This document shows, piece after piece, positions 2,700 through 46,716 of a DNA stretch of 64,000 bases (positions within the stretch are counted from its first letter, which is position 1; the number at the start of each line of letters is the position of its first letter). The translations under genes and the position numbers were made by a program. Location: IMG/VR virus record IMGVR_UViG_3300034073_005389, positions 62,001-126,000 of that record; one strand, given 5' to 3'. The notes beneath the pieces were generated by a model, which ran no database searches, had not been told where the DNA came from, and was given only the letters and a program-made list of their open reading frames with translations.

Positions 2700-5600
2700 T
2701 TAAGTCCCCGTGGTTGGAGCGGTAGGCTGGGTAGTTGTTTGTGGTGGTTGTACATTTAATTTAACCCAACAATCTACTACATATGAAAATAGTGCTTTTC
2801 TTTGTTTATCTACTTCTACGCTTTTTCTAGGATCTGGGTTAATGGCATTGGCTCCAGCATTTGTATTTTCTTTATATTGTCTGTTGGCTAAAGACTGCTC
2901 TTTTTCTATTAATAATCCAGCTTGAGTGGTCAAATCTCTACTAATTGAAATAGCTTTTGCCGATGGAGAGCGATGATCTTCTTTAGAAGATACATCTACT
3001 TCTATAACTTGTACAGATTCTGGTGGGAACTGTATATTATTAATATTATTGTTAGATGCATCTTGTTGATTGAAAGTTGAATTACCACATAATATATCTT
3101 TAATATAATTAGCAAAGTTAACTAAATTTGTACTAGCAAATTTAGTTTTTTTACTATCATAATAAATTCTTAATTCAATTTTACTATTAACATTAGTTCC
3201 TTTTGCATTTTGAGTATAAATTAAATAAGAAGCATTATTTAATATATTATTTATTATTGTAGCATTAGCTGGACCATAATTAGGACCTCCAATATTTCCA
3301 TCTTTAGGAGGTTGAAAAGTCTCAGACTTATCATTTGGATCATACATAATGGCTCCATAACTAGATTCATTAAATGAGCTATTTTGCCTTTGTACTTGTA
3401 AAGACCCTGTTTCTTTATTATTAAATAATAATTTTCCAACTATATCTAAAGTAGTAGGAATATACTCTCCTGGAGCATGACCATAAGTAAGTGTTAGTGA
3501 AGTAGTAAAGCTTCTTCCTGAAGTATAGTTATGGCTAACAGAATCAACATAAAATAATAAGCCTTTGTCTTCTATAAATACTACTTCACCAGGTTGGTAG
3601 TACTCATTGCCAGATACTGTAACACTTCCTCTAATAATATTATTTCTAGCACGACTTAATAAACTAACAGCATAAGGAGCACATTGAGTATTTGGATCTC
3701 TTAAAAATGGAACAACTACTGGAGAGTTAGTTCCCAATAAACCATAATTTCTCCACAAATCATAATCAATTGCTTTTGCAGTAACTAATGCATTTCCATT
3801 AGCAGGAAATGAATTTAATCCTGAAGGTAAAGCATCAGGAGCCTCGCTAATTAAGGTTCCTTGAACTTCTACTGTTGTATACTCTGGAAAATTTTCTGAA
3901 AAATTATAATTAAGAATCTGACTATTTTTAATTACATATCTTTTACCCGCATCAGGACCATAATCATCATATGTCTCATCCTCAATCATGTGTTCAAAAA
4001 CTTCAGGAATATTATCATTTGCAAAAGCACCAGACACTAATAAACTATTAGTTACGGAAGAATCAGCATCTAGTGACTTATATTCTTTTGCATTTACCAA
4101 AGCACTAGCAAATATTTTAATTAATCTTTGTCTTTCTGATAATTTAGAAGCTAAATCTTTAGTTACTTTAAATACATCTACTTTAATACTAGCATTAGCG
4201 TCGCCTTGATTATTAGTAATATTTAAAGCTCCTGACCCATTAACTATATAAGCTATAGAGCTAAGAGAAACTTTTTGACCCGACTTATTTTCTATTCTAG
4301 TTTTTAACAAACTTAATAAATTGTTAGTTTCAAAATTAACAGAATCATCAATATTAAAAGAGCTATCTGCTAGTGTAGGATTTTTAGTAGTTTTTTCTAA
4401 TACTTGATTGATAAAAGAATATCTTTGTGCATTAGTAAAAATATCTTTAGTACTACTAGCTTGTCGCTGAATGGCATTAAATCCTGGAAATTGTTGACCG
4501 CTTTGACCTAAATTGACATCAGGATCTTTTTGAGTAACTAGTTGAGTGATATCTGCAATAAATCCATCTGAGTTAGATACAAAGGCAAATGCTTCGCCAG
4601 AACCGTTTGCAGATGGTCCATTTATAAATTTTTGAGCAGATACATCATCAAAATATTTTAGTATTGCACAGTCCAAACGAATATAATCTTCTATTATCTC
4701 TAATCGCTCTCGCAATGTAGTTAACTGTTCATTAAACAAATCTTCTAAAAATTGAGGAAAAATTTGTATACCAAAAGCTTTTTTCTGATACATCATCTTA
4801 TAGAAAACAGAGCTTGGCATTCTATTATACTGCGGCGGTCGCACTCTAATATGACCTTGAGAATCACAAAACACTTCTAAATTTAATAAGTTAGCAGCTG
4901 TTTTTATTTTTTGATCTACAGATAAAAATTGATTTTTATATAATTCCATCTGAGAAGCTAAAGCAGAATTAAATGCTGCAATATCATAATCTTTATCATA
5001 AAAATCATCTACAATAAATAAGTTTTTATCTTCGTTAGATCGAACAGCATATGACATTCTTCTAGTCAAAAAATTAACTTGTCTACGCAAAAACCTTCTT
5101 GTTTTTGGCATAACACTTTTTTCATCTTCTTTATAATAAAATTCATCAGAGTTAAAAGAAATAGTATCTCCTACTTGTACAAAAGCTTGAGTATTATCTT
5201 TTTTAACTTGATTCATTAAATCATTAATTTCTTTATTTAACTGCTGTCTAGCATTAGAAATTATTTGAGCTTGGTCAGAATCCACGCCCAATCCTAAAGC
5301 CTTGGCTTGATCAGTAGTAGCATATGTGCCTATTAATACGGCTTTGTCATTTAATTCTGCTAATCTTTTTAATTTTTCATTAACTTGTCGATTTGTATCT
5401 TCAATTCTTGCTAAAGTAAAAATAGCTTGTTTGTATTCAGCCTCATTGACGCTTAATGTTTTAAAAGGAATAAAATTTCCCCATAACATATTTCTTTTTT
5501 GCAAATCATTTTGTAATGAAGTAAAAAATGAGCGAGCAGGATCTTCTTGCGACTGAGGATCTCTACCAAAACCATTTAATTTTGTCACTGCATTCCAATA

Positions 5601-20700: not shown

Positions 20701-23700
20701 AAGGAATTGTCTCATATTCTCCTTTATCATTTACACACAACGCCCAATTTATATTGCTAGCAGGTGATTCTTTTAGCGTAGGTACAACTACAGTTGTATC
20801 ATTCATGGCAATAAACTTACCATTTACTAATGCTAAGCCACCAGTTAAATATATTTGACCATCATTAGGATTAGGATCTACTCCTTTATCTTCTAAATCA
20901 AATCCTCTAATTACTCCATTACCATGTAAATACTTCTCTCCTAAAGCAATATAATTAAGAGCTGAAGTAGTTAAATCTTTTTCACTAGTATTTCCAAATT
21001 GCCTTTCATCTCGTAAATGAGTTACTTTGTTGGTAACACCATTAACTTGACATGTGCCTAATAACATAATCTCTTGATCTAGAGATAATGTAGGGAATAA
21101 TTGAAAATCAATTAAACCGTCTACTACAGGTGATACTGTCAAGTTAACATCAAAAATAATGTCTATGTAATCTACGTTTGTTTCATCATAGAATCTAACA
21201 ACATCACCTAGCCTGCCAAAAGTAAGAGGTCCTTGTTGTGTATAATTAGATCCGTCATAAGAACATAAATATCCGTTAAATAAACCATTTGCGGTTACAC
21301 TTAACATTCTTAATGTTATTTTGTTTACTGTACCAAATTGATAGCCTCTTAATTTAGGAGATATTTTAATAATATTAAGCTTAGCTAATTCAGTATTAGT
21401 AAATAAAGTGGTAGCTCCATTTACAGTAAAATTTCCTCCACTAATATTAATTCTGCCACGCTCTTGTGTAAATGTTTTACCATTTTGGTCTACATATACT
21501 TCAAAATGACGTTTGAATGGTCCCACTACAGAGAAATCTGAGGCATTTTCTCCATTAAAAGTAACAGAATCAGAGTTAAAGTAAATTGCTACTTGATATC
21601 CATCATAGCCATCTAATGATACTGGTGGCGATAAGCCATTACCATGAATAGCATCATATACAGTAATTTCAGTAGATGGATTTGGAGGGCAAGTAACGCA
21701 TAAACTTTCAATAATAAATCTACCATAATTTATTAAACCTAAATTTTCAATAGGCTGAACTACAAGAGTTTTACCTACTGCCAATCCAGAAGTTTCTAAA
21801 TCATATGGTATACGATATGTAGTTTGAACTCTTCCATTGGGACCTGGGACTATATTTCTGTTTACAATCGTAGCTGTCCAATATCCATCACCATAAGTAT
21901 CTAGTACTTGATCTGGCTCTAGTGCTAGTTTGTCTTTTTCAACTCCATTTACATAATAATTATTTCTTTTTAATGGAACAAATAATTTTGTAGGTAATTG
22001 TGCAGATTCTGGAGAGGCATAAGTTGCGGAATATGGGGGGCTAGCTATATTTGATCCTCCTACACCAAAACCCAAGGGATCTACAGGAGAAAATGTGGCA
22101 GCCGCAAATAAACCTACTACGTTATTAGGAAAATTTAAAGCTGTAGCTGCTGGATCGTATACTCCTATAGAATCTACAATCCCACTAAGTATAGAGAAAG
22201 ATGCATTATTATAAGGATCTGCTAAAGCAATTCCAAATTCTCCTTGATATTGGAAAGCTACAAATCTATAATTATATCCATTTTGTCTAAATGCGTTATT
22301 TGTTGCCTCTACAATAGAATCTAAGGTATATTTACCAGGACTAGCACCTGCATTACCAGTCACGTCAATAGCTGGTAGAATAGTATATCCATCATCTGGA
22401 TTACCAGTAGGATACAAAGCTAAATAAAGAGAGTAGTGAGAGTTATCAAAAACGTCTGGATTAAATCCTAAACCTAATGCCATTGCCCCTGTAGGATTAG
22501 AAACAATTAAACTAGGCATGGCATTAAATTGATTATTAGCAGCAGAAAGTGCCAATGCCCCATATTTATTTATGTTAAATAAAGGCTTGTCAATTCTAGC
22601 ATAACCATCAGTAGTATACTTTAAGTTCTTACCATTAACTCTCACTACATATTTTTTATTGCCAACGCTTTGAATATATTTCTTTTCTTTGATAATAAAC
22701 GGAACTTCTACTGTTCCATAGTTAACTCTAACTATATCTCCTATTTTAACTGCCGCAAACTGAGCATCAAAAGCATTTGAGCTAACTAAATTTGATGCTG
22801 GAGTAAATTCAATAATATCATCACCATTATTAATATTATCTACTGGTGCGCTAGCAGTTCCATTATTAAGCAAATATGTAGTAACTTGAGTAACAGGAAC
22901 AATAGGCTGACCATAACCATCTTGTAATAAGCTAGAAGATCTAGAAACCCTAGAAATACCATTAGAATATAAATTCTGTATTCTAGTCCCTAATAAGAAA
23001 ATACTAGCACTATCAATATACTCCGCAAACTGCTGTAAATCCGTGGCTGTTTGTGGAATTGTTGAAAATCTAGTAGTATTTAAATAAATACCGCTAGAAA
23101 CGTGAGCATGAGTAGCTGGATAAGTAGAGCCGTCATTAGTAATTACTAATGTGGCTGGAACTGTAGGAGATCCATCAGCAAATTGATGCTCCAACAATTC
23201 AGTGTTCATGTCATTAATAACGGCATAACCGCTAGCATTATTTCTATCTGTTCTAAATTTATTTTTTAATAATTGAGCAGGATCATTTGTTACATCAATT
23301 TGGCTTAAAGTGTGGCGATAAATCATGCCAAGTAAATGTGGCTCTAGTTTAGAACCGGAAACTCCAATCCATCCTAAAGCACTATTCACCCCATTAGATA
23401 AGTCAGTAATATAGTTAAATAAATCTTGAGTTCTATGATCTAGTCTTAATTTAGACTCTGGAATCTCTGCATTAACAGAAATTTGGTCATTAGTAATAGG
23501 TAAAGTAACTAATCCTAAGCTAGTTAATGCTGATGACTTTATAGTCCCATCTGGATTTAAAGAAATACCTAGCCTGGCAGATATAGATGAAGTGGTTCCA
23601 TCTCCATCTAATCCTAGATATTGCTCAATATTAAAAACCGCATCTCTAACTGCATTAATTGCCTCTCCGCCAATTTCTGTTAAATTGTCATTAACAATTG

Positions 23701-37024: not shown

Positions 37025-38206
37025 TTATAATTTTTTATTAATCTCTATCCATTCATTTTCCCAAATAAAAACAAAATTGTATCCATTAGATCTAAATATT
37101 TTTTCTTTTTCAATTGTTCTACTATATAATTCTTTAAATGTTTTTTTACAAGTTTTATTATAATCATCTAAATTATAAATTTTAGGATTTCCATGATAAT
37201 AATCTCCCCAAAACTCATAAATTGTATTCGTCTCAGGAACATATGCATCTACTAAATATCTTTTTCCATTAATATATATTTTATGTTGTCGATATTTTTC
37301 ATCTATCTTTAGATAATTCAGCCACTCTATCTCTACTTTAGATATTCTATGAGAACAATAAGGACAATCACTACCCTTACTCCTAGCCCTCATATTAATC
37401 GATGCACTCCAACTATGACCCCTATTCTTACATATCCACCAAACTTTGTACCTACTACCACTTCCCGCAGTATACTCCTCCGGTCTTTTAACGTTTTTAC
37501 TATAATCCCATTCTACACATATCTCAGGATGAGTTACCAATAAATTATTCCTACTGTTTACACGCTTCCCAGCACAAAATGGACATCCTGTCTTACCATC
37601 TTTATAACTATTAACTACTCGATAAATTCTAGAATTAAAAACCTCATCACATTTTTTACATCTCCACTTCCCAATTTTAGCACTATAACTGCTTACCTGA
37701 TAAGCAAAAGGATGTAATAAATATCTAGATAACTCCGGATAATTTGACTCTAAACTATTTATCAAACTTACTTTTTTACTAGTACAATATGGACACCCTA
37801 TCTTATAAATAGTGCGGTTACATATTTTTTGATTAAAAAATAAATTGCACTTAGAACACTTCCACTCTACAACCTTGTCACTACCATAATTTAATAAATT
37901 ATAATCTTCTATGTTATTCTTTGACCACTCTAATATTAAATCAGGAGAATGCTGCGCTAAACTAGTTTTTAACTTAGCACTCCTAACTTGATTGGCAGGA
38001 TAATGCCTACATATCTTGGATTCATGAGATTTACGACGAAACCAATCCTTTAAAGAAATATAATACTCCTTCCCATTACATCGATTGCAATTAAAATAAT
38101 ATTTAATTTTTGAATATAATGTAATATTATCAGGAATAGGTCCGTTTTTAATAACATCCCACTCCAACTCCAATAAAGGATATTTAGCTAATAACTCACT
38201 TTTCAT
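37025..38206 (-). CDS. Zn-ribbon repeat protein with C-terminal PD-(D/E)xK / Vsr-like nuclease
   Basis: Repeated P.L..EW...N...W.C..C...CPYC units; C-terminal YLVDAY...IYEFWGDYYHGNP...IWENEW. Confidence 0.75.
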   Translation of the reverse strand: MKSELLAKYPLLELEWDVIKNGPIPDNITLYSKIKYYFNCNRCNGKEYYISLKDWFRRKSHESKICRHYPANQVRSAKLKTSLAQHSPDLILEWSKNNIEDYNLLNYGSDKVVEWKCSKCNLFFNQKICNRTIYKIGCPYCTSKKVSLINSLESNYPELSRYLLHPFAYQVSSYSAKIGKWRCKKCDEVFNSRIYRVVNSYKDGKTGCPFCAGKRVNSRNNLLVTHPEICVEWDYSKNVKRPEEYTAGSGSRYKVWWICKNRGHSWSASINMRARSKGSDCPYCSHRISKVEIEWLNYLKIDEKYRQHKIYINGKRYLVDAYVPETNTIYEFWGDYYHGNPKIYNLDDYNKTCKKTFKELYSRTIEKEKIFRSNGYNFVFIWENEWIEINKKL

Positions 38207-40340
38207 TTTTAAATATATAAACTAATTCACTCTTGGTGACCCCAGCCGTCTTAGTCAAATGCGACCTAACAGTCCTTAGGCTCACTTCTTCTACCACATT
38301 TCCAAATACCTCTGCCGCCATATTTACCATTCTAGGATAATTCTTCACGTTCAATCCAAAGTATTTCCCAGCTTTTAACATATATTTCGCATTCTCTAAG
38401 GTATTCTTCCAATATACATTGTAAAAATAATCCTCTCCCTTACTATACGCTTGACGATTATCTAAACAATAGACCTCTTGGGAATAATATGGTGGCGAAC
38501 TAAATACAAAATCTACACTATTCTCCCCTAACTTTACATTCTCCGATCCATCATTAATCAATGTCACATTCTCTAAACCTAATCCATCTTTCATCACTTC
38601 TAACTCATCTGTGGTCCATGGATCAACTCCAATATACTTTCTTCCACAACTAGCTGCCCCTAACATTCTACCTCCCCAACCAGCCGAGTAATCAAATACT
38701 GTCTCTCCCTTTCCGCTGTATTTCATATACAGGTATTTTGCAATTCCTGGCTTAAAAATAGAAATGCTAGGAACTACTCTAGATGATCTCATTCCCTGAA
38801 TTAACATCCTAAATGAAATATTAAATGTCTCTGTATTGTTAGGATCCTTCCAATCTAATCCTAACCTATTTTGAATAAGTTTGCGTAACTTATCATCATT
38901 ATTAAATATGTCTTTCATAGTAGGTTGCTTGTATTCTGTAGCATCATAAAACTTATGACAATAATATTTGCAAATATCTGTAGCCAATGAATCATTGTTA
39001 AATAACTCATTTACCGATAAATCAGGAGCATACTCTACTAGTTCTTTCCAACTTTTCTTTACTTCTGATAAATTATTTGGATACTGCCAGCCCAATGCCC
39101 TAAAGTGCTGAAATAATGGCTCAATTAATTCAAATCGCTCATCTCTGCTCAATGTCTTAACATAACTAGCTGTCAACAATTTTCCATTTATTTCTACAAT
39201 TTTATCGTAGTTAGTTCTATTATTGTTAGTGGTGCTTTTAATAGGATGATATTTATTATCACTGACTATTTTAGATACTGTTCTAGGATGTACTTGATGT
39301 TGTTTAGCTACTTCAACCAATTTAGCTCCATCCTCTACTTTATTAAGTATACTAATTTTAGCATCTTCTGATACTTTGTATTCTGTTCTAGAGAATCTAC
39401 GATTACCTTGTTGCTCTGCTAACTCTAGCATTCTTGTATATTTACGATCTAATCTAGTACTTTCTGTAGAGTCTTGGTATAGCCAAGTAGCTAATTTTAG
39501 TACTTTCTCATTGCCATTAGACTCTAATTCATAAGTATTATTGCCTGTTTTAGAAATACAACTTAAATTAACAATTAAATCTAATTCTTTTAAGATGATA
39601 CGTTGAATGGCTTCTCCACATTCTTTGGTGGTAGCTAAAGACCATTTCCATTCATTGTTGGAGCGATGTGCTAAACTACCATCTCCATCAAACATACCTC
39701 TTATAAATGGAACTGTAAATTGATTATCTAGCCATTGGGGATAGGTGATAATAAAGCTTTTGGCTCTAGGAACGCCCAAAGTTTTCATTTTTTCACATAA
39801 ATGTTTGCTGTATAGTCTAATACAACAAGTAGGATATTTTTTATCATTTAAATCAGATAAATATCTTTTTACTTTAGAATTTGGCAACCCAACAAAATTT
39901 GATAATTTAATTAAATGATTATAATCTTCGTCTTTTAAAGTAACACTAAAAGTACTTGTAATATCAGAATTATACGCATCTGCATAAAAAAAGCCTAACC
40001 AGTATGCTTTTTCTTGCGTATCAATAATGTCAAAAATATTCTCATTAAATTGAGTAAATCTGTGAGAAGAAGACTTGTCTCTCAATGCTCCCTTTTGATC
40101 TACCCATTTTTGAACTCGTCTTTTGTCAATATTGTATTTCATACCAAGAGATTTGGCGCTTACTCCTTGTTGATAAAGATCAACAATAAAAGGTATTTTA
40201 TCTTCAGTAAATTCCTCTCTAACTAAACAATAATTATTATCTTTAATTATTTGTTTTACTTCTTTTTCTTCCATATTTAATAATATAGAAATTCTTTTTG
40301 CCGCCAATCCATTCTCTGCCATCTCTTTTATTGTATTCAT
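38196..40340 (-). CDS. HTH-LAGLIDADG-HTH-amino-DNA methyltransferase fusion
   Basis: YWLGFFYADA and FIRGMFDGDGS; C-terminal VFDYSAGWGGR (SAM-binding motif I) and VFSSPPY (motif IV). Confidence 0.8.
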   Translation of the reverse strand: MNTIKEMAENGLAAKRISILLNMEEKEVKQIIKDNNYCLVREEFTEDKIPFIVDLYQQGVSAKSLGMKYNIDKRRVQKWVDQKGALRDKSSSHRFTQFNENIFDIIDTQEKAYWLGFFYADAYNSDITSTFSVTLKDEDYNHLIKLSNFVGLPNSKVKRYLSDLNDKKYPTCCIRLYSKHLCEKMKTLGVPRAKSFIITYPQWLDNQFTVPFIRGMFDGDGSLAHRSNNEWKWSLATTKECGEAIQRIILKELDLIVNLSCISKTGNNTYELESNGNEKVLKLATWLYQDSTESTRLDRKYTRMLELAEQQGNRRFSRTEYKVSEDAKISILNKVEDGAKLVEVAKQHQVHPRTVSKIVSDNKYHPIKSTTNNNRTNYDKIVEINGKLLTASYVKTLSRDERFELIEPLFQHFRALGWQYPNNLSEVKKSWKELVEYAPDLSVNELFNNDSLATDICKYYCHKFYDATEYKQPTMKDIFNNDDKLRKLIQNRLGLDWKDPNNTETFNISFRMLIQGMRSSRVVPSISIFKPGIAKYLYMKYSGKGETVFDYSAGWGGRMLGAASCGRKYIGVDPWTTDELEVMKDGLGLENVTLINDGSENVKLGENSVDFVFSSPPYYSQEVYCLDNRQAYSKGEDYFYNVYWKNTLENAKYMLKAGKYFGLNVKNYPRMVNMAAEVFGNVVEEVSLRTVRSHLTKTAGVTKSELVYIFKNEK

Positions 40341-40374: not shown

Positions 40375-40402
40375 AATATAGAGATATATCACATATTGTC
40401 AA
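40375..40402 (-). promoter_or_regulatory. Sigma70-like promoter upstream of the LAGLIDADG-MTase gene
   Basis: TTGACA-N16-TATATT on the minus strand, 35 nt upstream of the ATG. Confidence 0.5.
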
Positions 40403-40967
40403 GGTTCATTTTTAATTTTATATTTAAATATATTTTTTCTATAAAATTTATAAATTGATCATGGCTCATGGTTCTTTTGCACATATTACATGTTTTGCAG
40501 CAAACAACTACATTATCGATGGTATGAGGTTTAAATTGATTTATTCTATCTAGACCATTATAAATAAAGAATCCATTTTCTTTTGCATCTTTAGATCTTC
40601 GCGCGTCATAAAAAGATTCATTATATTTACCATTGGGTTCACTATTGCAATAATAACAATTTAAAGAAGATAATGTTAAAAACATTTCAAAAGAAATATC
40701 TCCATCTGAATATCTATTTTTATATATTTTTCTAGCAGAAGCTTCTTGTGGAGAATATTTTTTCCTAGCTTGTGTCATTTTTTTAATTCTATTTTTTCTT
40801 TGCTCTATATTTAAACATCCACAAGATTTAACTCTACCAGATCTTAATTTGTTAGTTGTTACTATTTTGTTTGTACCACAATCACATCGACAAAGCCACT
40901 TTGATTTAGCTTCTTCTATTACTTCTAATCTAGTAAATTTTATTCCAATAAGATTAATTTTTTTCAT
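40389..40967 (-). CDS. HNH homing endonuclease
   Basis: WLCRCDCG...KSCGC N-terminal module; CYYC...NGLDRI...NVVVCCKTCNMCK. Confidence 0.8.
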   Translation of the reverse strand: MKKINLIGIKFTRLEVIEEAKSKWLCRCDCGTNKIVTTNKLRSGRVKSCGCLNIEQRKNRIKKMTQARKKYSPQEASARKIYKNRYSDGDISFEMFLTLSSLNCYYCNSEPNGKYNESFYDARRSKDAKENGFFIYNGLDRINQFKPHTIDNVVVCCKTCNMCKRTMSHDQFINFIEKIYLNIKLKMNLDNM

Positions 40968-41089: not shown

Positions 41090-41120
41090 AAAAAGAGCTG
41101 CGATTGCTCGCAGCTCTTTT
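41090..41120 (-). terminator. Terminator after the major capsid gene
   Basis: AAAAGAGCTGCGA-ttgc-TCGCAGCTCTTTT; GCAA tetraloop on the minus strand. Confidence 0.85.
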
Positions 41121-41145: not shown

Positions 41146-43349
41146 TCAGGCGCCGATTACTACTGACTTGCGACCAGCAGCAACACCACGAGGATTGACG
41201 ATACCGATACCGATGATTTCGCTAACTACCCATCCTAATTTAAGCTGTTTTGGTTCGTCAGCAGGAAGTACTTCGATGTCTTGGCGCACGGGCATGACAC
41301 CGACGAATTCAGGATCAGCACAACCATAGATAGTGCCTGGGGGAACGATCTTTGATACCATGATATCGGTGCCCCAGATATGAGCGTAGAGACCGGTTTG
41401 TAGTACTTCACGCATGGTGACGGGATCGAAATCACCGCCGCCTACGCCTTGACCACCACCTGAACCCCACTTGAGGATATCGGTAAATTCATTGATGTTC
41501 ATGAAGTATTTGGTGGTTACGAGGTCCCAGCGATCAATTTGTTGTTTGATTTCTACTAAGTCTCTCTTGAGTAGACCAGCGTCAGCAATATCTGTTACGG
41601 TGTTTTCTACTGAAGCGGCGGCATCGAGGGCGGCGAAGACGTTGGCATCTTCTTGAGCCATGATTTCTTGACGAGCCTTCTGGACTGCACGGTCGATGAC
41701 GTTGAAGCGGCGACGCTTAACTTCAGCGATACGTACTGTGGGGTTGGCGTAGATTTCGAATTCAGGAACTACAACGCGATCACCGAATACGCGGCTTTCA
41801 GGACCGGTACCGTTGCTGCTGATTACTACAGCGGCAACATCGATATCACGATCATAGGTGGGCATGGTGCCTTGGGGTACATAGGCAGTTGTTAAAATTA
41901 ACGTTAGTTAATTTGATAAGTCATTTCTGCTTATCTCTTCATATCTCTATGAAGGTCAGACTGTATCACCATCACTTTTTTGTGACGATTGGCATTCTAG
42001 TCGTTGAGGATTGTGGCATTAATTTATACTGCATACATTCTACGACATGGGGTCTAATGATGTCGCTGAGTTTTTGAGTATTTTCTTTATTTATATTTAT
42101 CTGAGAGTATTCTTTATTTTTATAAGTATATTTCATAACATTTGAATTAATGTCAAAACATCTTTTTAAATAATCTCTTAAAATATAATTTTCTTCTTCT
42201 GTAAAGCCCATTGTTGCTAACCTGGCATTAACACCAGATTTTAAATTTCCATCATCTTGAAACCAAACAGCTAAACAAAGCGGAGTCATATATATGTCTA
42301 AATTTTTTGGCACATGTTTAACTCTTGAAGAGTCATAAAACATATTTGCAAAATAATTTAAATCTTTATGACAAATTGTTGCGGTTTGTAGCATGGTAGA
42401 ATTACCTCTTTTATCTTCATACTCTCTATGAGTATTGATAAAAGGATCTAACATAGCTATTTTCCAAAAAAAATATGGAGATTGTGCTTTACAGTGGCTG
42501 AAAGATAATTTAAAATTTCCATTAGGACTATCTTTATGTAAACAACCATCTCCTAACAGTGTACCAACAATAATTTGTTTTTGTATACTATTAATAGGCG
42601 TTTCTCTTAAGATATCATATTTTCTGGAAGATGAGACTGGTTCTCTATTATTTGCTTTTAATATCCTAGATATTGCGGGAGCAGATATCTCATACCAATT
42701 AGCAATATTTTTAATAGTTTCGCCATTATCAAATTTATTAACTATATCTTTTATTTGATCTTGAGTAAAATCAGAAACATATTTTTTTCTAAATTTTACT
42801 TTTTGATTTTTTAAAATTTGCCTTGTTTTTTCATAAGAAATATGAAGCTTTTCGGCAATTTCTTTAATAGTTAATCCAGATTCATAGAAATTAGAAATCT
42901 CTTTTTCCATTATGCCACTCTTTCCTGCTGATTGTCTATATCATCTTAATTCTGTTACTATAACTATTTTGAAATTAACTTCTGTGTATAATTTATAGAG
43001 TGTTATAGTGATTAAGCTTTTAGAGTTTCCAGCATATAGCCAATTTTTAGATCCACTACCCTCAGTTTAATGGATCGACTACAAGGGCGCGACGTGCAAT
43101 TCCATGATAGTCTAAGTTTCTGCGGATAGGATTGGCCATTGCTTGAGCCAAAGCAATTTTGCCGTCTTGTGTCTGGATGGCGCGAGAAATTAATTCGTCG
43201 CGTTTTTCATCTGACAATGAGGGTTGACCAGCTAATCCCATGTTTGAGGGGGTGTTTTCTTCTAAAATACTAGCGTATTTTACTAATGTATGAAGCGCAT
43301 CCTTTAGCGATGATGCGTTCATTTCGCCTTTGCTATTGAACATATTCAT
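41146..43349 (-). CDS. Major capsid protein, spliced: exon 1 43349..43070, exon 2 41879..41146, 337 aa
   Basis: GGAG RBS at 43357-43360. The join restores ARRALVVDPL-PQGTMPTYDRD. PEFEIYANP...RRFNVIDRA..KA..EIMAQED is HK97-fold-like. Raised GC/codon bias and a strong terminator. Confidence 0.85.
41880..43069 (-). mobile_element. Group I intron (1190 nt) in the major capsid gene
   Basis: P1: exon GAUCCAU pairs with GUGGAUC, giving a U-G wobble at the splice site. P10: GGGUA/UACCC. Core elements P AUGCUGGAAA, Q AAUCAGCAGG, R CUCAACGACUA, S GAUACAGUC; P3 UUGGC/GCCAA; terminal G at 41880. Confidence 0.92.
41972..42910 (-). CDS. Intron-encoded LAGLIDADG homing endonuclease
   Basis: Two HTH segments, IVGTLLGDGC and LAVWFQDDG. 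Starts just after element Q; its 3' end overlaps R/P3. Confidence 0.9.
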   Translation of the reverse strand: MEKEISNFYESGLTIKEIAEKLHISYEKTRQILKNQKVKFRKKYVSDFTQDQIKDIVNKFDNGETIKNIANWYEISAPAISRILKANNREPVSSSRKYDILRETPINSIQKQIIVGTLLGDGCLHKDSPNGNFKLSFSHCKAQSPYFFWKIAMLDPFINTHREYEDKRGNSTMLQTATICHKDLNYFANMFYDSSRVKHVPKNLDIYMTPLCLAVWFQDDGNLKSGVNARLATMGFTEEENYILRDYLKRCFDINSNVMKYTYKNKEYSQININKENTQKLSDIIRPHVVECMQYKLMPQSSTTRMPIVTKK

Positions 43350-43508
43350 TCGAGATCTCCGAGTTGTAAAAGAATTGTTTGCCAGCATTCGCCAGCTGAC
43401 ATGCAAAAATGCATGTTCTTATATCTAATAATTTAATATTACTTATATTAATTTCTATTATAAAAATGCATATTACGATATATGCTTGACAGCATCTTTG
43501 AGGAAATA

Positions 43509-44678
43509 ATGAATAATAAAGATCTTATTGGGATAAAATTTAATAAATTAACAGTACAGTCTAAAGCAGAGAGTATACTTGGAGGAAAGAAAGTAAAAAG
43601 ATATTGGACAGCATATAATTGTAATTGTGAATGTGGGAATAAAATTATTGTAAAAACAGCTCATTTATTAAGAGGGCAAGTTAAATCATGTGGCTGTATA
43701 AATAAGAATGGTAGGTCTATTAAGCCTGGAGATAAATACAATAAATTAACTGCCTTAACATATAAAAAAGGAAGTAAATGGTTATGTCAATGTGATTGTG
43801 GAGAAATAGTAGAAATTAATACAGAAAGTATAATTAATGGCAATACAAAATCTTGTGGATGTTTAAAGTCTGAAATATCTTCTAAAAATTCTAATAAGTT
43901 AATAGAAGGTAGGAGAAAAAATGATCCTAGAATAGCTTCAGCTAGAAGAATTTGGCAAAGTTATTGTTACAATGACAAGATGTGCGAGATAGATTTTGAA
44001 AATTTTTATAAATTATCTCAACAAGATTGTTATTATTGTGGATTGAAGCCCAATAGAGAGTACAATTATTTTTTAACTAAATCATCTAATAGTTCTGAGA
44101 AGGCTAAAAAAGAAGGATTATTTATTTATAATGGGTTAGACAGAATAGATAGTAATAAATATCATACAATAGAAAATGTAGTATCATGTTGCAATGATTG
44201 TAATAGATGTAAGAATAATAGACCGGTTAATGATTTTTTAATTTGGATACAGAATATAAAAGAGAATAATAATAAAATAATAATTAGTAGTAGAGAAATA
44301 CCTAAAGGATCATTAGGAACATCGATTAAATGTATATTTTATAATTACAAGAAAGATACAGATTTAAAGATTGAGGAGTTTTATAATATTTCGCAGATGA
44401 ATTGTTATTATTGTGGATCATTACCGAACAATGTATTTAATAGGGCGAAGACAGATAAAAAAGCTTCTAAGAAAGCAAAGTTAGAAGGAGATTATATTTA
44501 TAATGGATTGGACAGGATTGATTCTAATTTAGGTCATGTTCGTGGGAATGTAGTACCATGTTGTAAGTATTGTAATTTTGGTAAGAGCAAATTAAGTATA
44601 GTTGAGTTTTATAATTGGGCTAATAGAGTTAAAAAGTATCAAAAAAAAGAGTCGGGAAAAAATCCCGACTCTTTATAG
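43509..44678 (+). CDS. Free-standing HNH endonuclease with duplicated domains
   Basis: Two CxCxCG...KSCGC modules and two CYYCG...YNGLDRIDS...NVV.CC..CN domains; GAGG RBS before 43509. Confidence 0.8.
   Translation: MNNKDLIGIKFNKLTVQSKAESILGGKKVKRYWTAYNCNCECGNKIIVKTAHLLRGQVKSCGCINKNGRSIKPGDKYNKLTALTYKKGSKWLCQCDCGEIVEINTESIINGNTKSCGCLKSEISSKNSNKLIEGRRKNDPRIASARRIWQSYCYNDKMCEIDFENFYKLSQQDCYYCGLKPNREYNYFLTKSSNSSEKAKKEGLFIYNGLDRIDSNKYHTIENVVSCCNDCNRCKNNRPVNDFLIWIQNIKENNNKIIISSREIPKGSLGTSIKCIFYNYKKDTDLKIEEFYNISQMNCYYCGSLPNNVFNRAKTDKKASKKAKLEGDYIYNGLDRIDSNLGHVRGNVVPCCKYCNFGKSKLSIVEFYNWANRVKKYQKKESGKNPDSL
44641..44674. terminator. Bidirectional terminator
   Basis: AAAGAGTCGGGA-aaaaa-TCCCGACTCTTT between convergent genes. 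Confidence 0.75.
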
Positions 44679-44699: not shown

Positions 44700-45383
44700 T
44701 CAGGGTCCAACGGGTGGGTTGAAATAGAAGGTAACGAAGGTAAATTGACGTGGTGAAGCGCCTAAGCCTGAGGGGCTGTTTAGAGCGCTGACGAGGTAGC
44801 TAGGAGTATTGACTAATGAGCCATTGGTCTCGAAGTCAATTAAAGTAGCTACTACTGGAGCGCCACCTACTGCAGCAGGTGAGCCTACTGGAGTTAATTG
44901 TCCTGTTGAGGTATAGGTAAGGGGAGCGCCAGCTGATAGACCTACGTTGGTGGGTTGTAGACCGGTAGCAACAGCGGTATCAACTGCATCAAGTGATACA
45001 GCGTATACGCCGGGTTGGTGCCAGCAGGTTACTTTGCCTGAACCTGTAGCGGTGTTTGGTCCTAATACAACGCCTGAGGTAACTTTACCAACTGTACCAC
45101 CTACTACTGAACCGAAGAGGGTGCCGTAACCAGCAATACCTTCGTCAGCTAACATAAGAGGACGTGAAGTTGAAAGAAGATCAAAAGTTACAACTGTGCG
45201 CTTAGCAGTGCCTGATGGATTGACGTAACCGTCAAATACGTCAGCTGCAGCTAAATCAGGTGAGCTTAGGTTTAATGAAACAAAAGTTACTACTTCGCCA
45301 CCGAGGTAGCTGTTGATTTGTGTATCGTAACCGTCGAATTGACCGAGTGGGTTACCAGCTTGATTTACTAGTTTAAGAGCCAT
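44700..45383 (-). CDS. Putative capsid decoration/cement protein
   Basis: Upstream of the MCP gene with similar codon bias; TATGSGKVTCW motif; 2 DGY motifs. Confidence 0.55.
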   Translation of the reverse strand: MALKLVNQAGNPLGQFDGYDTQINSYLGGEVVTFVSLNLSSPDLAAADVFDGYVNPSGTAKRTVVTFDLLSTSRPLMLADEGIAGYGTLFGSVVGGTVGKVTSGVVLGPNTATGSGKVTCWHQPGVYAVSLDAVDTAVATGLQPTNVGLSAGAPLTYTSTGQLTPVGSPAAVGGAPVVATLIDFETNGSLVNTPSYLVSALNSPSGLGASPRQFTFVTFYFNPPVGP

Positions 45384-45489: not shown

Positions 45490-46716
45490 TTAAATTTCTG
45501 GAAGATCTGAAGATTGAGGGATTGTTGGTTTAACTTCTTGTTTAGGCTGTTCTTGTCTTCTTGACATACGTTCATTTACTTTATTTTTAACTTCTTGACC
45601 TTTTTCTAATAATTTAATAATTCTTTCTACTGAAGCTATATATGGATCCATTAATCTAATAATATTTTCTACTGCGGAATTAAATGGTGCCCAGCCACCT
45701 TCAATTGGCAATAGATCTGTAACTGAAGATCCAAGTCCTTTGTCTTCAAAACTTCTTTTTTCTGTATCAAATATTTCTATTCTTGTTTTGCCGCCAGCTG
45801 AAGTATATGTCTTTTCAAGAGATTTTTTAATATCTTTTATATCTAATAATTTTGCAAAAATTTCTTTTGCAGCTTCATCTCTGCCTCTAATATCTTCAAC
45901 ATTTTGATTTTTAGCAGCATCAACAGGATTTGTTTTTATTTGCGCTTGATCAATATTTTCTATTAATTTTTTAAATTTTAAATAAGATTCATCTAGCTCA
46001 ACAACCTTATCTGCTAAATAATTTAATTGTTCTTTAAATTGCAAACTTGGTTTTGCAGCAAAAAAAGATTGAAGCCAGCTTGGATTTGTCAATTTATTAA
46101 GCTCATCCATTAGTGCGCTATAATTTTTTTCATATCCTTCATCAGCAGCTGGTAATTTATTGGCTACATAAGCAGCACCCACTAAAGAAGCCAGTAATCC
46201 TGATATAACTTTTGTTCTTAATTTAAGAGCTTCTTTTTTAAGAGATTTTTTAGATTCTACTTCTTGTGCAACTGATTGTAAACAATTATCTGCTAATTTT
46301 CTTAATTTTTCTTTATTTCTATTATCTAAATCATTAGCTACTCTAACCAAAGATAATAAAAATTGTTTTTCAGCATATTTGCGTTGAGTTAGTAATCCAT
46401 CTGGATTTTTATTTACAATGCGTAAATTAATATTTTGTCTTTCAATGTTGTTTTCAACTAATCCATTTAATCTATCATAAGCAGGAGAAAGTACTACAGG
46501 CTCTTTATGAGCAATTTCCATAATATTATTTTTATATTTCATATCTGGAATTGTTTCTGGTTTTACTCCATACAATGCAGCTATAGCAGAAACATCTAAA
46601 GAATCTGCTCTAGGATTGTTTTCTAATGCTTTGAAACTTTTTTCAGAATCATTTGAAATAAGTTTTCTATCTTGAGCAATTTTAACAAATTCTTCAAAAA
46701 TGTCACTGCGTCTCAT
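45490..46716 (-). CDS. Putative internal head protein
   Basis: Helical; FVKIA and LKKEA motifs; one hydrophobic segment. Confidence 0.45.
   Translation of the reverse strand: MRRSDIFEEFVKIAQDRKLISNDSEKSFKALENNPRADSLDVSAIAALYGVKPETIPDMKYKNNIMEIAHKEPVVLSPAYDRLNGLVENNIERQNINLRIVNKNPDGLLTQRKYAEKQFLLSLVRVANDLDNRNKEKLRKLADNCLQSVAQEVESKKSLKKEALKLRTKVISGLLASLVGAAYVANKLPAADEGYEKNYSALMDELNKLTNPSWLQSFFAAKPSLQFKEQLNYLADKVVELDESYLKFKKLIENIDQAQIKTNPVDAAKNQNVEDIRGRDEAAKEIFAKLLDIKDIKKSLEKTYTSAGGKTRIEIFDTEKRSFEDKGLGSSVTDLLPIEGGWAPFNSAVENIIRLMDPYIASVERIIKLLEKGQEVKNKVNERMSRRQEQPKQEVKPTIPQSSDLPEI

What the first reader, a model, noticed from the sequence alone, without database searches (positions are those of the whole stretch)
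41880..43069. Group I intron interrupts the major capsid gene
Seen: the ORF track splits the MCP into 114-aa and 239-aa pieces. P1, P10, P3, P/Q/R/S and the terminal G define exact junctions (GAT CCA T|TA CCC CAA), which restore the frame to VVDPLPQGT. The endonuclease ORF runs into the catalytic core (R/P3), so its translation would compete with folding. Established: phage group I introns mostly occupy nucleotide-metabolism and replication genes. An intron in the most highly expressed late gene is unusual and makes capsid supply dependent on splicing.
Basis: partly seen in the sequence, partly recalled or inferred. Interest (0 to 1): 0.62.

Follow-up and report, generated by a model that had tools for sequence, protein, structure and literature searches.

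The report
Mobile intron splits phage capsid gene
The only major capsid gene of this 361-kb phage is split by a 1,190-base self-splicing group I intron that carries its own homing endonuclease; this is a genuine but known kind of element, and its relatives sit in capsid genes of many uncultured phages.

Summary
On the minus strand, the capsid gene is exon 1 (43349..43070), a 1,190-nt insertion (43069..41880) and exon 2 (41879..41146). The two exons match adjacent positions of one major-head-protein profile (87|88). Bacillus phage G and 77 of the 80 closest metagenomic relatives read straight across the junction.

The insertion is a group I intron. It has a U.G pair at the 5' splice site in P1, P10, a terminal G and helices P3 to P9.2. 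Nine introns at this same site show compensatory changes in P1 and P10. ORF-less relatives score 60-84 bits on Rfam's group I model, against a cut-off of 50. The window's own copy scores 25 bits, because a 312-aa I-SceI-like LAGLIDADG endonuclease gene sits in the P6a loop. That gene runs 48 nt into P6a'/P6'/P7/P3'/P8.

Capsid-gene introns have precedents (mycobacteriophage LittleE, lactococcal phage Tuc2009), so this is a new member of a known kind.

One result goes beyond the finding. About two thirds of 100 sampled members of this intron lineage lie in major head protein genes, which belong to seven PHROG families. This capsid family carries such introns at five or more sites.

The parts
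43070..43349 (-). Capsid gene exon 1 (280 nt; probable start ATG 43349; last base U43070 is the first base of the Leu94 codon)
   Evidence: phrog_2522 profile positions 9-87. Relatives start at MNMFN. Aligns to phage G gp27 up to base 23447.
41880..43069 (-). Group I intron, 1,190 nt, 28% GC against 43-50% in the exons
   Evidence: Empty-site comparison. Family covariance-model hits. Rfam RF00028 25.4 bits, E 6.7e-4, on the 3' half. GC content.
41146..41879 (-). Capsid gene exon 2 (734 nt including the stop codon; begins with the TA that completes Leu94)
   Evidence: phrog_2522 profile positions 88-317, E 4.8e-61. 51.5% identical to phage G gp27 from base 23448.
43050..43076 (-). P1 and the internal guide. 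Exon GAUCCAU (43076-43070) pairs with GUGGAUC (43056-43050), giving U43070.G43056 at the splice site. GGGUA (43061-43057) is the P10 guide. An in-frame stop codon, UGA, lies at 43064-43062.
   Evidence: Read from the sequence. Among nine introns at this site the P1 pair covaries as A-U, G-C and C-G.
41875..41879 (-). P10 exon strand UACCC, pairing with GGGUA 43061-43057
   Evidence: Compensatory UGCC/GGCA in L130.
43039..43044 (-). P3 5' strand AUUGGC (pairs with 41993-41988)
   Evidence: 6 of 6 Watson-Crick pairs. Five of the six P3 pairs covary in the family.
42927..43033 (-). P4-P5-P5a domain. P4 is GCUGG 43033-43029 with UCAGC 42931-42927 (the P and Q elements). P5 is UCUA 43024-43021 with UAGA 42938-42935.
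   Evidence: Covariance-model hit 43033..42927. The minimum-energy fold reproduces P4 and P5, z = -2.6.
42912..42926 (-). 5' strands of P6 (AGGA 42926-42923) and P6a (GUGGCAU 42918-42912). They contain the likely ribosome-binding site of the endonuclease gene.
   Evidence: Complementary to UCCU 42010-42007 and AUGCCAC 42019-42013. P6 is supported in the family.
41972..42910 (-). Intron-encoded homing endonuclease, 312 aa. It has two N-terminal helix-turn-helix modules and a double LAGLIDADG core (LLGDGCL, WFQDDGN). It sits in the P6a loop and its last 48 nt overlap the core.
   Evidence: PF03161, 114 bits, E 8.7e-33. phrog_11023. I-SceI E 5e-11 over residues 106-299.
41959..42019 (-). 3' core: P6a' 42019-42013, P6' 42010-42007, P7 GACUA 42002-41998 (R element), P3' 41993-41988, P8 41987-41982 with 41975-41970, and P7' CAGUC 41963-41959 (S element)
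   Evidence: 48.3 bits. 51 of 55 family-invariant columns are kept.
41880..41954 (-). P9 (41954-41948 with 41943-41937), P9.1 (41935-41930 with 41920-41915), P9.2 (41914-41907 with 41902-41895) and the terminal G at 41880
   Evidence: The fold gives all three hairpins, z = -5.2. Six of the seven P9 pairs covary in the family.
41091..41120 (-). Terminator-like hairpin (13-bp stem followed by a T run) 26 nt after the capsid stop codon

Best explanation
The single major capsid gene of this 361-kb relative of Bacillus phage G is interrupted, inside the Leu94 codon of the conserved VVDPL|PQG motif, by a mobile group I intron.

Inferred mechanism:
1. The gene is transcribed as one pre-mRNA.
2. The intron's guide sequence pairs with the end of exon 1 (P1, with a U.G pair at the splice site) and with the start of exon 2 (P10).
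3. The P3-P9 core folds and binds guanosine.
4. Two transesterifications remove bases 43069..41880 and join 43070 to 41879. This gives a 337-aa capsid protein.

The intron carries an I-SceI-like LAGLIDADG endonuclease gene in the P6a loop. During co-infection this enzyme should cut intron-less capsid alleles at the same site. Repair then copies the intron in (homing), which explains the presence/absence pattern among close relatives.

The endonuclease's ribosome-binding site and start codon lie in or next to P6/P6a, and its last 48 nt form P6a'/P6'/P7/P3'/P8. On any one RNA molecule, therefore, translating the endonuclease and folding the ribozyme should exclude each other. An in-frame stop codon 6-8 nt into the intron keeps ribosomes that are translating exon 1 out of the core.

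Shown here: the anatomy, the homology, the covariation and the empty sites. Inferred: splicing in vivo, endonuclease activity and the translation/folding conflict.
For: Exons and junction. The exons abut in the profile (87|88), in phage G (23447|23448) and in 77 of 80 relatives (gap 0). DNA alignment to the empty sites in L005 and L006 gives a 1,190-nt insertion.

Ribozyme. All helices from P1 to P9.2 and the terminal G are present. A 28-sequence alignment of ORF-less homologues has 96.1% of cells paired, against 33-42% when the partners are slid. Its covariation score is 0.599 against 0.123 or less, and 21 of 36 pairs show compensatory change. Five of those homologues exceed Rfam's group I cut-off at 60-83 bits. 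The window keeps 51 of 55 invariant columns. It is hit by the family model only inside the intron.

Same-site introns. Nine introns at the same capsid site all have U at -1 and G at the end, with compensatory changes in P1 and P10. Eight of the nine have a stop at the third intron codon.

Endonuclease. It is intact and I-SceI-like.

Gene status. This is the only capsid gene in the genome. Exon 2 is up to 99% identical in protein to intron-less alleles.

Literature. The rules for ORF/core overlap and the in-frame stop match published phage introns (PMC3073962).
Against: The window's own intron is below Rfam's gathering score (25.4 against 50 bits).

The last P7 pair is A.C in this copy. The same variant is present in two diverged same-site introns (L047, L075).

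IMG/VR labels the record 'provirus', so a decaying copy cannot be formally excluded.
Confidence: 0.9

Rival explanations
1. The intron is a decayed relic that no longer splices. The capsid gene would then be a pseudogene in a defective, integrated prophage.
For: IMG/VR classes the record as a provirus. The window copy is below the Rfam cut-off. There is one A.C mismatch in P7. No RNA data were obtained.
Against: The low Rfam score is explained by the 939-nt ORF in P6a. Every helix is intact and 51 of 55 invariant core positions are kept. The A.C variant is shared by diverged same-site introns. Both exons are open, and exon 2 is up to 99% identical to intron-less alleles. The endonuclease ORF is intact. 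The genome is 97% complete and has no second capsid gene.
Confidence: 0.06
2. The insertion is only an endonuclease cassette. The capsid protein would then be made as two separate polypeptides (95 aa and about 239 aa) that assemble without RNA splicing.
For: Exon 2 has an in-frame ATG five codons after the junction, which is why it appears as a 239-aa ORF. Free-standing HNH genes have also been inserted on both sides of the capsid gene.
Against: This does not explain a complete ribozyme core that covaries across homologues, or P1 and P10 pairing that covaries with synonymous exon changes. The split falls in the most conserved motif, within one codon. The nine same-site introns all keep U at -1 and a terminal G.
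Confidence: 0.02
3. The intervening sequence is an intein or a group II intron.
For: Both also split phage structural and replication genes and carry LAGLIDADG or other endonucleases (PMC12880540).
Against: The capsid reading frame hits a stop 6-8 nt into the insertion, so it cannot be an intein. The endonuclease ORF starts at its own ATG 160 nt into the insertion. The RNA matches group I models and no other Rfam family.
Confidence: 0.01

Closest known systems
Capsid-gene intron of mycobacteriophage LittleE (Cluster J; Pope et al. 2013, PMC3706429)
   Same: A group I-type intron in the major capsid gene of a phage, with U at the exon 1 end and G at the intron end. It carries a LAGLIDADG-like endonuclease ORF, is absent from close relatives, and sits in a genome rich in free-standing HNH genes. 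Splicing of LittleE was shown by RT-PCR.
   Different: The capsid protein family and the host are different. The mycobacteriophage hits of this capsid are roughly 155-kb phages, not the Cluster J phages. The LittleE endonuclease ORF is on the opposite strand, whereas here it is on the same strand, in P6a, and overlaps the core. The LittleE intron is 820 bp and its class was called 'most likely' group I. Here the class is supported by covariation.
Phage T4 td intron with I-TevI
   Same: A phage group I intron with the endonuclease ORF in the P6 region. The ORF's 3' end contributes to P6a and P7, the ribosome-binding site is sequestered in RNA structure, there is an in-frame stop just after the 5' splice site, and ribosome occupancy of the core impairs splicing (PMC3073962).
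   Different: I-TevI is a GIY-YIG enzyme in a nucleotide-metabolism gene, with a 20-nt overlap. Here the enzyme is an I-SceI-like LAGLIDADG in a late structural gene, with a 48-nt overlap that reaches P3' and P8. No P2 or P7.1/7.2 helices were seen here.
I-SceI (monomeric double-LAGLIDADG homing endonuclease; PDB 1R7M, 3OOR)
   Same: The nearest solved relative of the intron ORF: E 5e-11, with query residues 106-299 aligned to residues 31-228 of I-SceI. Both are encoded in group I introns.
   Different: The phage protein has about 100 extra N-terminal residues with two helix-turn-helix modules. Its target site is unknown but is presumably the intron-less VVDPL|PQG region.
Multi-intron phage genes and intron-rich jumbo phages (Jug phages, PMC12880540)
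   Same: In Jug phages, essential genes such as terL, nrdD and DNA polymerase are split by group I introns and endonucleases, and metatranscriptome reads confirmed about half of the predicted introns tested. The relatives L110, L126, L130, L157, L166 and L069 carry 2-3 introns in one capsid gene.
   Different: Jug phages average 18.5 small introns per genome. This genome has only two detectable group I introns. The Jug passages I read name no capsid-gene intron.

Membership tests
Group I intron (Rfam RF00028) | 5' splice site after a U that forms a U.G wobble with the internal guide sequence in P1 | tested here: met
   GAUCCAU (43076-43070) pairs with GUGGAUC (43056-43050), giving U43070.G43056. 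The neighbouring pair covaries as A-U, G-C and C-G in nine same-site introns.
Group I intron (Rfam RF00028) | Terminal G at the 3' end and P10 pairing of the guide with exon 2 | tested here: met
   G41880. GGGUA (43061-43057) pairs with UACCC (41879-41875). L130 has the compensatory UGCC/GGCA. Of the three boundary choices that the DNA alignment allows, only this one ends in G.
Group I intron (Rfam RF00028) | Conserved core with P3-P8 and P4-P6 domains, P/Q/R/S elements and the P3/P7 pseudoknot | tested here: met
   All helices were located. 51 of 55 family-invariant columns are kept. The family model hits at 48.3 and 15.9 bits. Covariation in homologues is 0.599 against 0.123 or less.
Group I intron (Rfam RF00028) | Score at or above Rfam's gathering cut-off (50 bits) | tested here: not met
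   The window scores 25.4 bits, E 6.7e-4, because a 939-nt ORF splits the model at P6a. ORF-less members of the same alignment score 60-83 bits. I treat this as a limit of the model, not as evidence against membership.
Group I intron (Rfam RF00028) | Guanosine-dependent self-splicing; spliced RNA in vivo | not testable with these tools
LAGLIDADG homing endonuclease (Pfam PF03161, I-SceI-like) | Pfam match above the cut-off, and two LAGLIDADG motifs each with an acidic residue | tested here: met
   114.1 bits against a cut-off of 25. Motifs LLGDGCL and WFQDDGN are visible in the translation. I-SceI E 5e-11.
LAGLIDADG homing endonuclease (Pfam PF03161, I-SceI-like) | Cleaves the intron-less allele at or near the insertion site | not testable with these tools
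   Indirect evidence only: 77 empty sites and at least nine occupied sites at the identical position among capsid alleles 72-99% identical in protein.
Major head protein, PHROG phrog_2522 (capsid family of phage G) | Full-length match to the family profile | tested here: met
   Exon 1 covers profile positions 9-87 and exon 2 covers 88-317 of 318. 307 phage records match exon 2, and most of the 75 rows listed are annotated as major capsid or head protein. The exons were searched separately and never joined.

The most novel reading that the evidence does not exclude
This intron is one member of a group I intron lineage that has not, as far as I could find, been described as such. The lineage is defined by a core with CCUCAACGACUA ... 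GAUAYAGUCUGA and an ORF, when present, in P6a. It preferentially colonises virion structural genes of uncultured phages.

Of 100 sampled members, about 65 lie in major head protein genes of seven PHROG families, 3 in portal genes and 1 in a tape-measure gene. The capsid family of this phage carries such introns at five or more different sites, with up to three in one gene.

If this is real, late structural genes, and not only nucleotide-metabolism genes, are a main habitat of phage introns. Homing with co-conversion of flanking exons could also help explain why this capsid gene stays 93-99% identical in protein where neighbouring genes are only 37-92% identical.
Probability: 0.4. Interest if true: 0.65.

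Novelty: new member of a known kind. Interest (0 to 1): 0.5.

Why it matters
For annotation, the 114-aa and 239-aa fragments should be merged into one 337-aa capsid gene joined at 43070|41879. The 312-aa ORF should be called an intron-encoded LAGLIDADG endonuclease.

For biology, every capsid subunit of a very large virion has to come from a spliced message, so splicing must be efficient late in infection. The endonuclease ORF overlaps the catalytic core, which gives a natural system to test how a phage balances endonuclease translation against ribozyme folding.

The population data are ready material for studying homing and interference between co-infecting jumbo phages. They comprise the occupied and empty sites, P1 and P10 co-varying with synonymous exon changes, several insertion sites in one gene, and free-standing HNH genes on both sides.

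The family-wide bias towards capsid genes, if it holds, changes the textbook picture of where phage introns live.

Tried and rejected
1. Rfam at gathering thresholds over the window gave no hit. E-value mode over the whole 64 kb also gave none. Only the focused 1.8-kb search showed RF00028, at 25.4 bits. The ORF in P6a explains this.

3. blastn of the locus against isolate phages found only the phage G capsid exon. No isolate carries this intron at this site.

4. A blastn search with an ORF-less family member found only partial, more distant relatives in isolates. The two loci I checked lie beside the terL fragment of an Acinetobacter phage and between two DNA polymerase fragments of a Thomasclavelia phage. 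A third hit lies under the AR9 RNA polymerase gene. The broader family is therefore not restricted to capsid genes.

5. I tested whether LittleE's capsid intron might be homologous by host gene. The mycobacteriophage hits are roughly 155-kb phages, not Cluster J, so I dropped the idea.

6. The first attempt to build the covariance model failed on a structure string of the wrong length. It was corrected.

7. The promoter scan inside the intron was not above chance.

8. The large protein searches, structure prediction and complex prediction were not used, because the family scans left nothing open.

9. The exons were searched by reference, one at a time. Inside the sandbox only, I made ORF-deleted 'mini-cores' of the four capsid introns to align them to A1. 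These were not sent to any search tool.
Full report
SETTING. The window is bases 62001-126000 of a 361,490-bp IMG/VR virus record. IMG/VR classes it as a 'provirus' and CheckV puts it at 97% complete. The genome is 33% GC. Its major capsid protein is closest, among isolates, to Bacillus phage G gp27. Exon 2 is 51.5% identical in protein. The genome holds only one capsid gene.

OBSERVATION. On the minus strand, ORFs of 114 aa (43062..43406) and 239 aa (41146..41865) flank a 312-aa ORF (41972..42910).

The two outer ORFs are halves of one protein. Against PHROG phrog_2522 (major head protein, 318 positions), exon 1 residues 24-113 cover profile positions 9-87. The frame that begins at 41877 covers positions 88-317 with E 4.8e-61.

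In phage G the exon 1 match ends at base 23447 and the exon 2 match starts at 23448. The phage G protein reads LLVVDPLPQGALP without interruption.

I never assembled the spliced sequence.

BOUNDARIES. The sequence reads ...GAT CCA T | taaactgagggtagtggatc ... ctatg | TA CCC CAA GGC. The intron is therefore 43069..41880, 1,190 nt, exactly as claimed.

A scan of IMG/VR with exon 2 found 394 relatives. The best 80 are 93-99% identical in protein.
- In 77 of these the exon 1 and exon 2 matches abut with a 0-nt gap.
- L047 and L075 carry homologous insertions of 1,061 and 1,066 nt at the same position.
- L069 carries two insertions.

DNA alignment to the nearest intron-less relatives, L005 and L006 (80-91% nt identity), gives two blocks. 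Window 43396..43068 matches locus 3674..4000, and window 41879..41086 matches locus 3999..4796. This is a clean 1,190-nt insertion with a 2-nt TA ambiguity.

The capsid start is probably ATG 43349, because relatives begin MNMFN. That gives a predicted product of 337 aa.

RIBOZYME. Every expected element is present:
- P1: GAUCCAU 43076-43070 with GUGGAUC 43056-43050, giving U43070.G43056.
- P10: GGGUA 43061-43057 with UACCC 41879-41875.
- P3: 43044-43039 with 41993-41988, 6 of 6 pairs.
- P4: 43033-43029 with 42931-42927.
- P5: 43024-43021 with 42938-42935.
- P6: 42926-42923 with 42010-42007.
- P6a: 42918-42912 with 42019-42013.
- P7: 42002-41998 with 41963-41959. The last pair is A.C.
- P8: 41987-41982 with 41975-41970.
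- P9, P9.1 and P9.2, then the terminal G at 41880.

Thermodynamic folding of the P4-P5 domain and of the 3' region reproduces these helices (z = -2.6 and -5.2).

Rfam's group I model reaches only 25.4 bits (E 6.7e-4) on the 3' half. It finds nothing at gathering level. The reason is the ORF inside P6a.

To test this, I collected relatives with the core motif CCTCAACGACTA-N20-50-GATAYAGTCTGA. At least 119 IMG/VR stretches carry it, with 132 cores in all. The window's genome has just one. About a third of the cores lack an ORF.

An alignment of 28 distinct ORF-less cores (A1) supports P3, P4, P5, P5a, P6, P7 and P9:
- 96.1% of cells are paired, against 33-42% when the partners are slid.
- 21 of 36 pairs show compensatory change.
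- The covariation score is 0.599, against 0.123 or less.

Five members of that alignment score 60-83 bits on RF00028, above the 50-bit cut-off.

An ORF-deleted copy of the window's core was made only inside the sandbox. It keeps 51 of the 55 family-invariant columns. Its apparent P3 mismatches are a 1-nt alignment shift.

A covariance model built from A1, which excludes the window, hits the window at only two places:
- 42073..41924, at 48.3 bits and E 1.4e-10.
- 43033..42927, at 15.9 bits and E 0.02.
It hits nothing else in the genome.

SAME-SITE INTRONS. Nine introns occupy this exact capsid site: the window, L092, L105, L126, L130, L166, L178, L190 and L069B.
- All have U at -1 and G at the 3' end.
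- The third base of the Pro93 codon (A, G or C) co-varies with the guide sequence (U, C or G).
- L130 changes exon 2 from UACC to UGCC and its guide from GGUA to GGCA.
- Eight of the nine have an in-frame stop at the third intron codon.

Most intron-less alleles carry C, not U, at the -1 position. The intron-bearing alleles therefore look constrained by the ribozyme.

ENDONUCLEASE. The 312-aa ORF matches LAGLIDADG_2 (PF03161, 114 bits) and has two N-terminal helix-turn-helix modules. I-SceI is its nearest solved relative (E 5e-11).

Its ATG (42910) follows the P6a 5' strand by one base. A purine-rich stretch that probably serves as the ribosome-binding site lies within P6/P6a. The ORF then reads through P6a', P6', P7, P3' and P8, and stops at 41974-41972 inside P8'. 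That is a 48-nt overlap.

The endonucleases of L047 and L075 (276-277 aa) and of L069B (424 aa) are homologous, at 33-37% identity. They cross the core in a different frame and stop inside the S element. The overlap is therefore read-through to the first stop, the published 'core creep' pattern.

The same review documents the in-frame stop after the 5' splice site. It also reports that ribosomes on core sequences impair splicing of the T4 td intron (PMC3073962). For this intron, the conflict between translation and folding is an inference.

WHAT IS NOT SHOWN. Endonuclease activity and target are untested.

COMPARISON AND NOVELTY. Capsid-gene introns are known:
- LittleE (Cluster J) has a capsid intron confirmed by RT-PCR, with a LAGLIDADG-like ORF.
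- The same paper cites a capsid-gene intron in lactococcal phage Tuc2009 (PMC3706429).
- Intron-rich jumbo phages are also described (PMC12880540).

This is therefore a new member of a known kind. It has an unusually complete in-silico case: an exact empty site, and P1 and P10 covariation with the exons.

BEYOND THE FINDING. I took the stop-free frame downstream of 100 cores of this lineage.
- 28 match phrog_2522.
- 12, 11, 8, 3, 2 and 2 match six other major head protein PHROGs: 1357, 1328, 267, 283, 334 and 752.
- 3 match a portal family and 1 a tape-measure family.
- A further 17-member cluster is weakly similar to phrog_2522.

The bias persists in long contigs. Of 23 classifiable cores on contigs of 30 kb or more, 14 to 18 lie in capsid genes. 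Enrichment of hallmark genes in short viral contigs therefore does not fully explain it.

There are caveats. The motif was derived from capsid introns. More distant relatives in isolates sit beside or under terL, DNA polymerase and RNA polymerase genes.

Within this capsid family, introns of the lineage occur near residues 71-77, and at 82|83, 94|95 (this one), 163|164 and 247|248. Up to three occur per gene.

Noticed in passing
window 43482-44678 (+) and 40389-40967 (-): Free-standing HNH/EndoVII-like endonuclease genes (398 and 192 aa; phrog_374 and phrog_1035) sit immediately upstream and downstream of the capsid gene. Both are insertions relative to the nearest relatives L005 and L006, where the spacers are 135 and 161 nt. 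Homologues of each occur in only 20 of the 80 related loci. With the intron, the capsid locus therefore carries three endonuclease genes.
   Followed up: partly
window 41146-43349, compared with 38196-40340, 44700-45383 and 45490-46716: The capsid exons are 43-50% GC in a 33% GC genome. Exon 2 is 93-99% identical in protein across the 80 retrieved IMG/VR loci, while the three neighbouring genes compared are only 37-92% identical in the same loci. The cause was not resolved. It could be strong purifying selection, expression-linked composition, or homogenisation of the capsid gene by homing-linked gene conversion.
   Followed up: partly
L069:2191-2452 and L069:2487-3998: One relative has two introns of the same lineage only 34 nt apart in the capsid gene. 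The first is a 262-nt ORF-less intron after ...DYH. After a 34-nt mini-exon comes a 1,512-nt intron at the window's site, with a 424-aa LAGLIDADG ORF that has several helix-turn-helix repeats.
   Followed up: partly
loci L085-L203 (IMG/VR), for example L110, L126, L130, L157, L166: The same intron lineage lies mostly in major head protein genes of seven different PHROG families, and also in portal and tape-measure genes. In this capsid family it occupies five or more sites, with 2-3 introns per gene in some contigs. About two thirds of the copies carry an insert of roughly 430-930 nt in P6.
   Followed up: partly
genome C1:298120-298314 (-), locus L001:1501-1695; outside the window: This is a second group I intron of a different type, at 52.1 bits on RF00028 and so above the cut-off. 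It lies next to a 287-aa ORF on the opposite strand and upstream of a PP-loop ATPase-like ORF (SGGADS motif). The interrupted gene was not identified.
   Followed up: no
window 41091-41120 (-): A strong terminator-like hairpin (13-bp stem, 6 G-C pairs, then a T run) lies 26 nt after the capsid stop codon. This fits a discrete, heavily transcribed capsid message.
   Followed up: no
intron-less alleles L005-L084, 20 nt on each side of the junction: The presumed homing site is conserved at non-synonymous positions but varies at synonymous ones. Most intron-less alleles have C, not T, at the base that must be U for splicing (Leu as CTN rather than TTA). Such alleles might be poorer splicing contexts, or resistant targets, but this was not tested.
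   Followed up: partly
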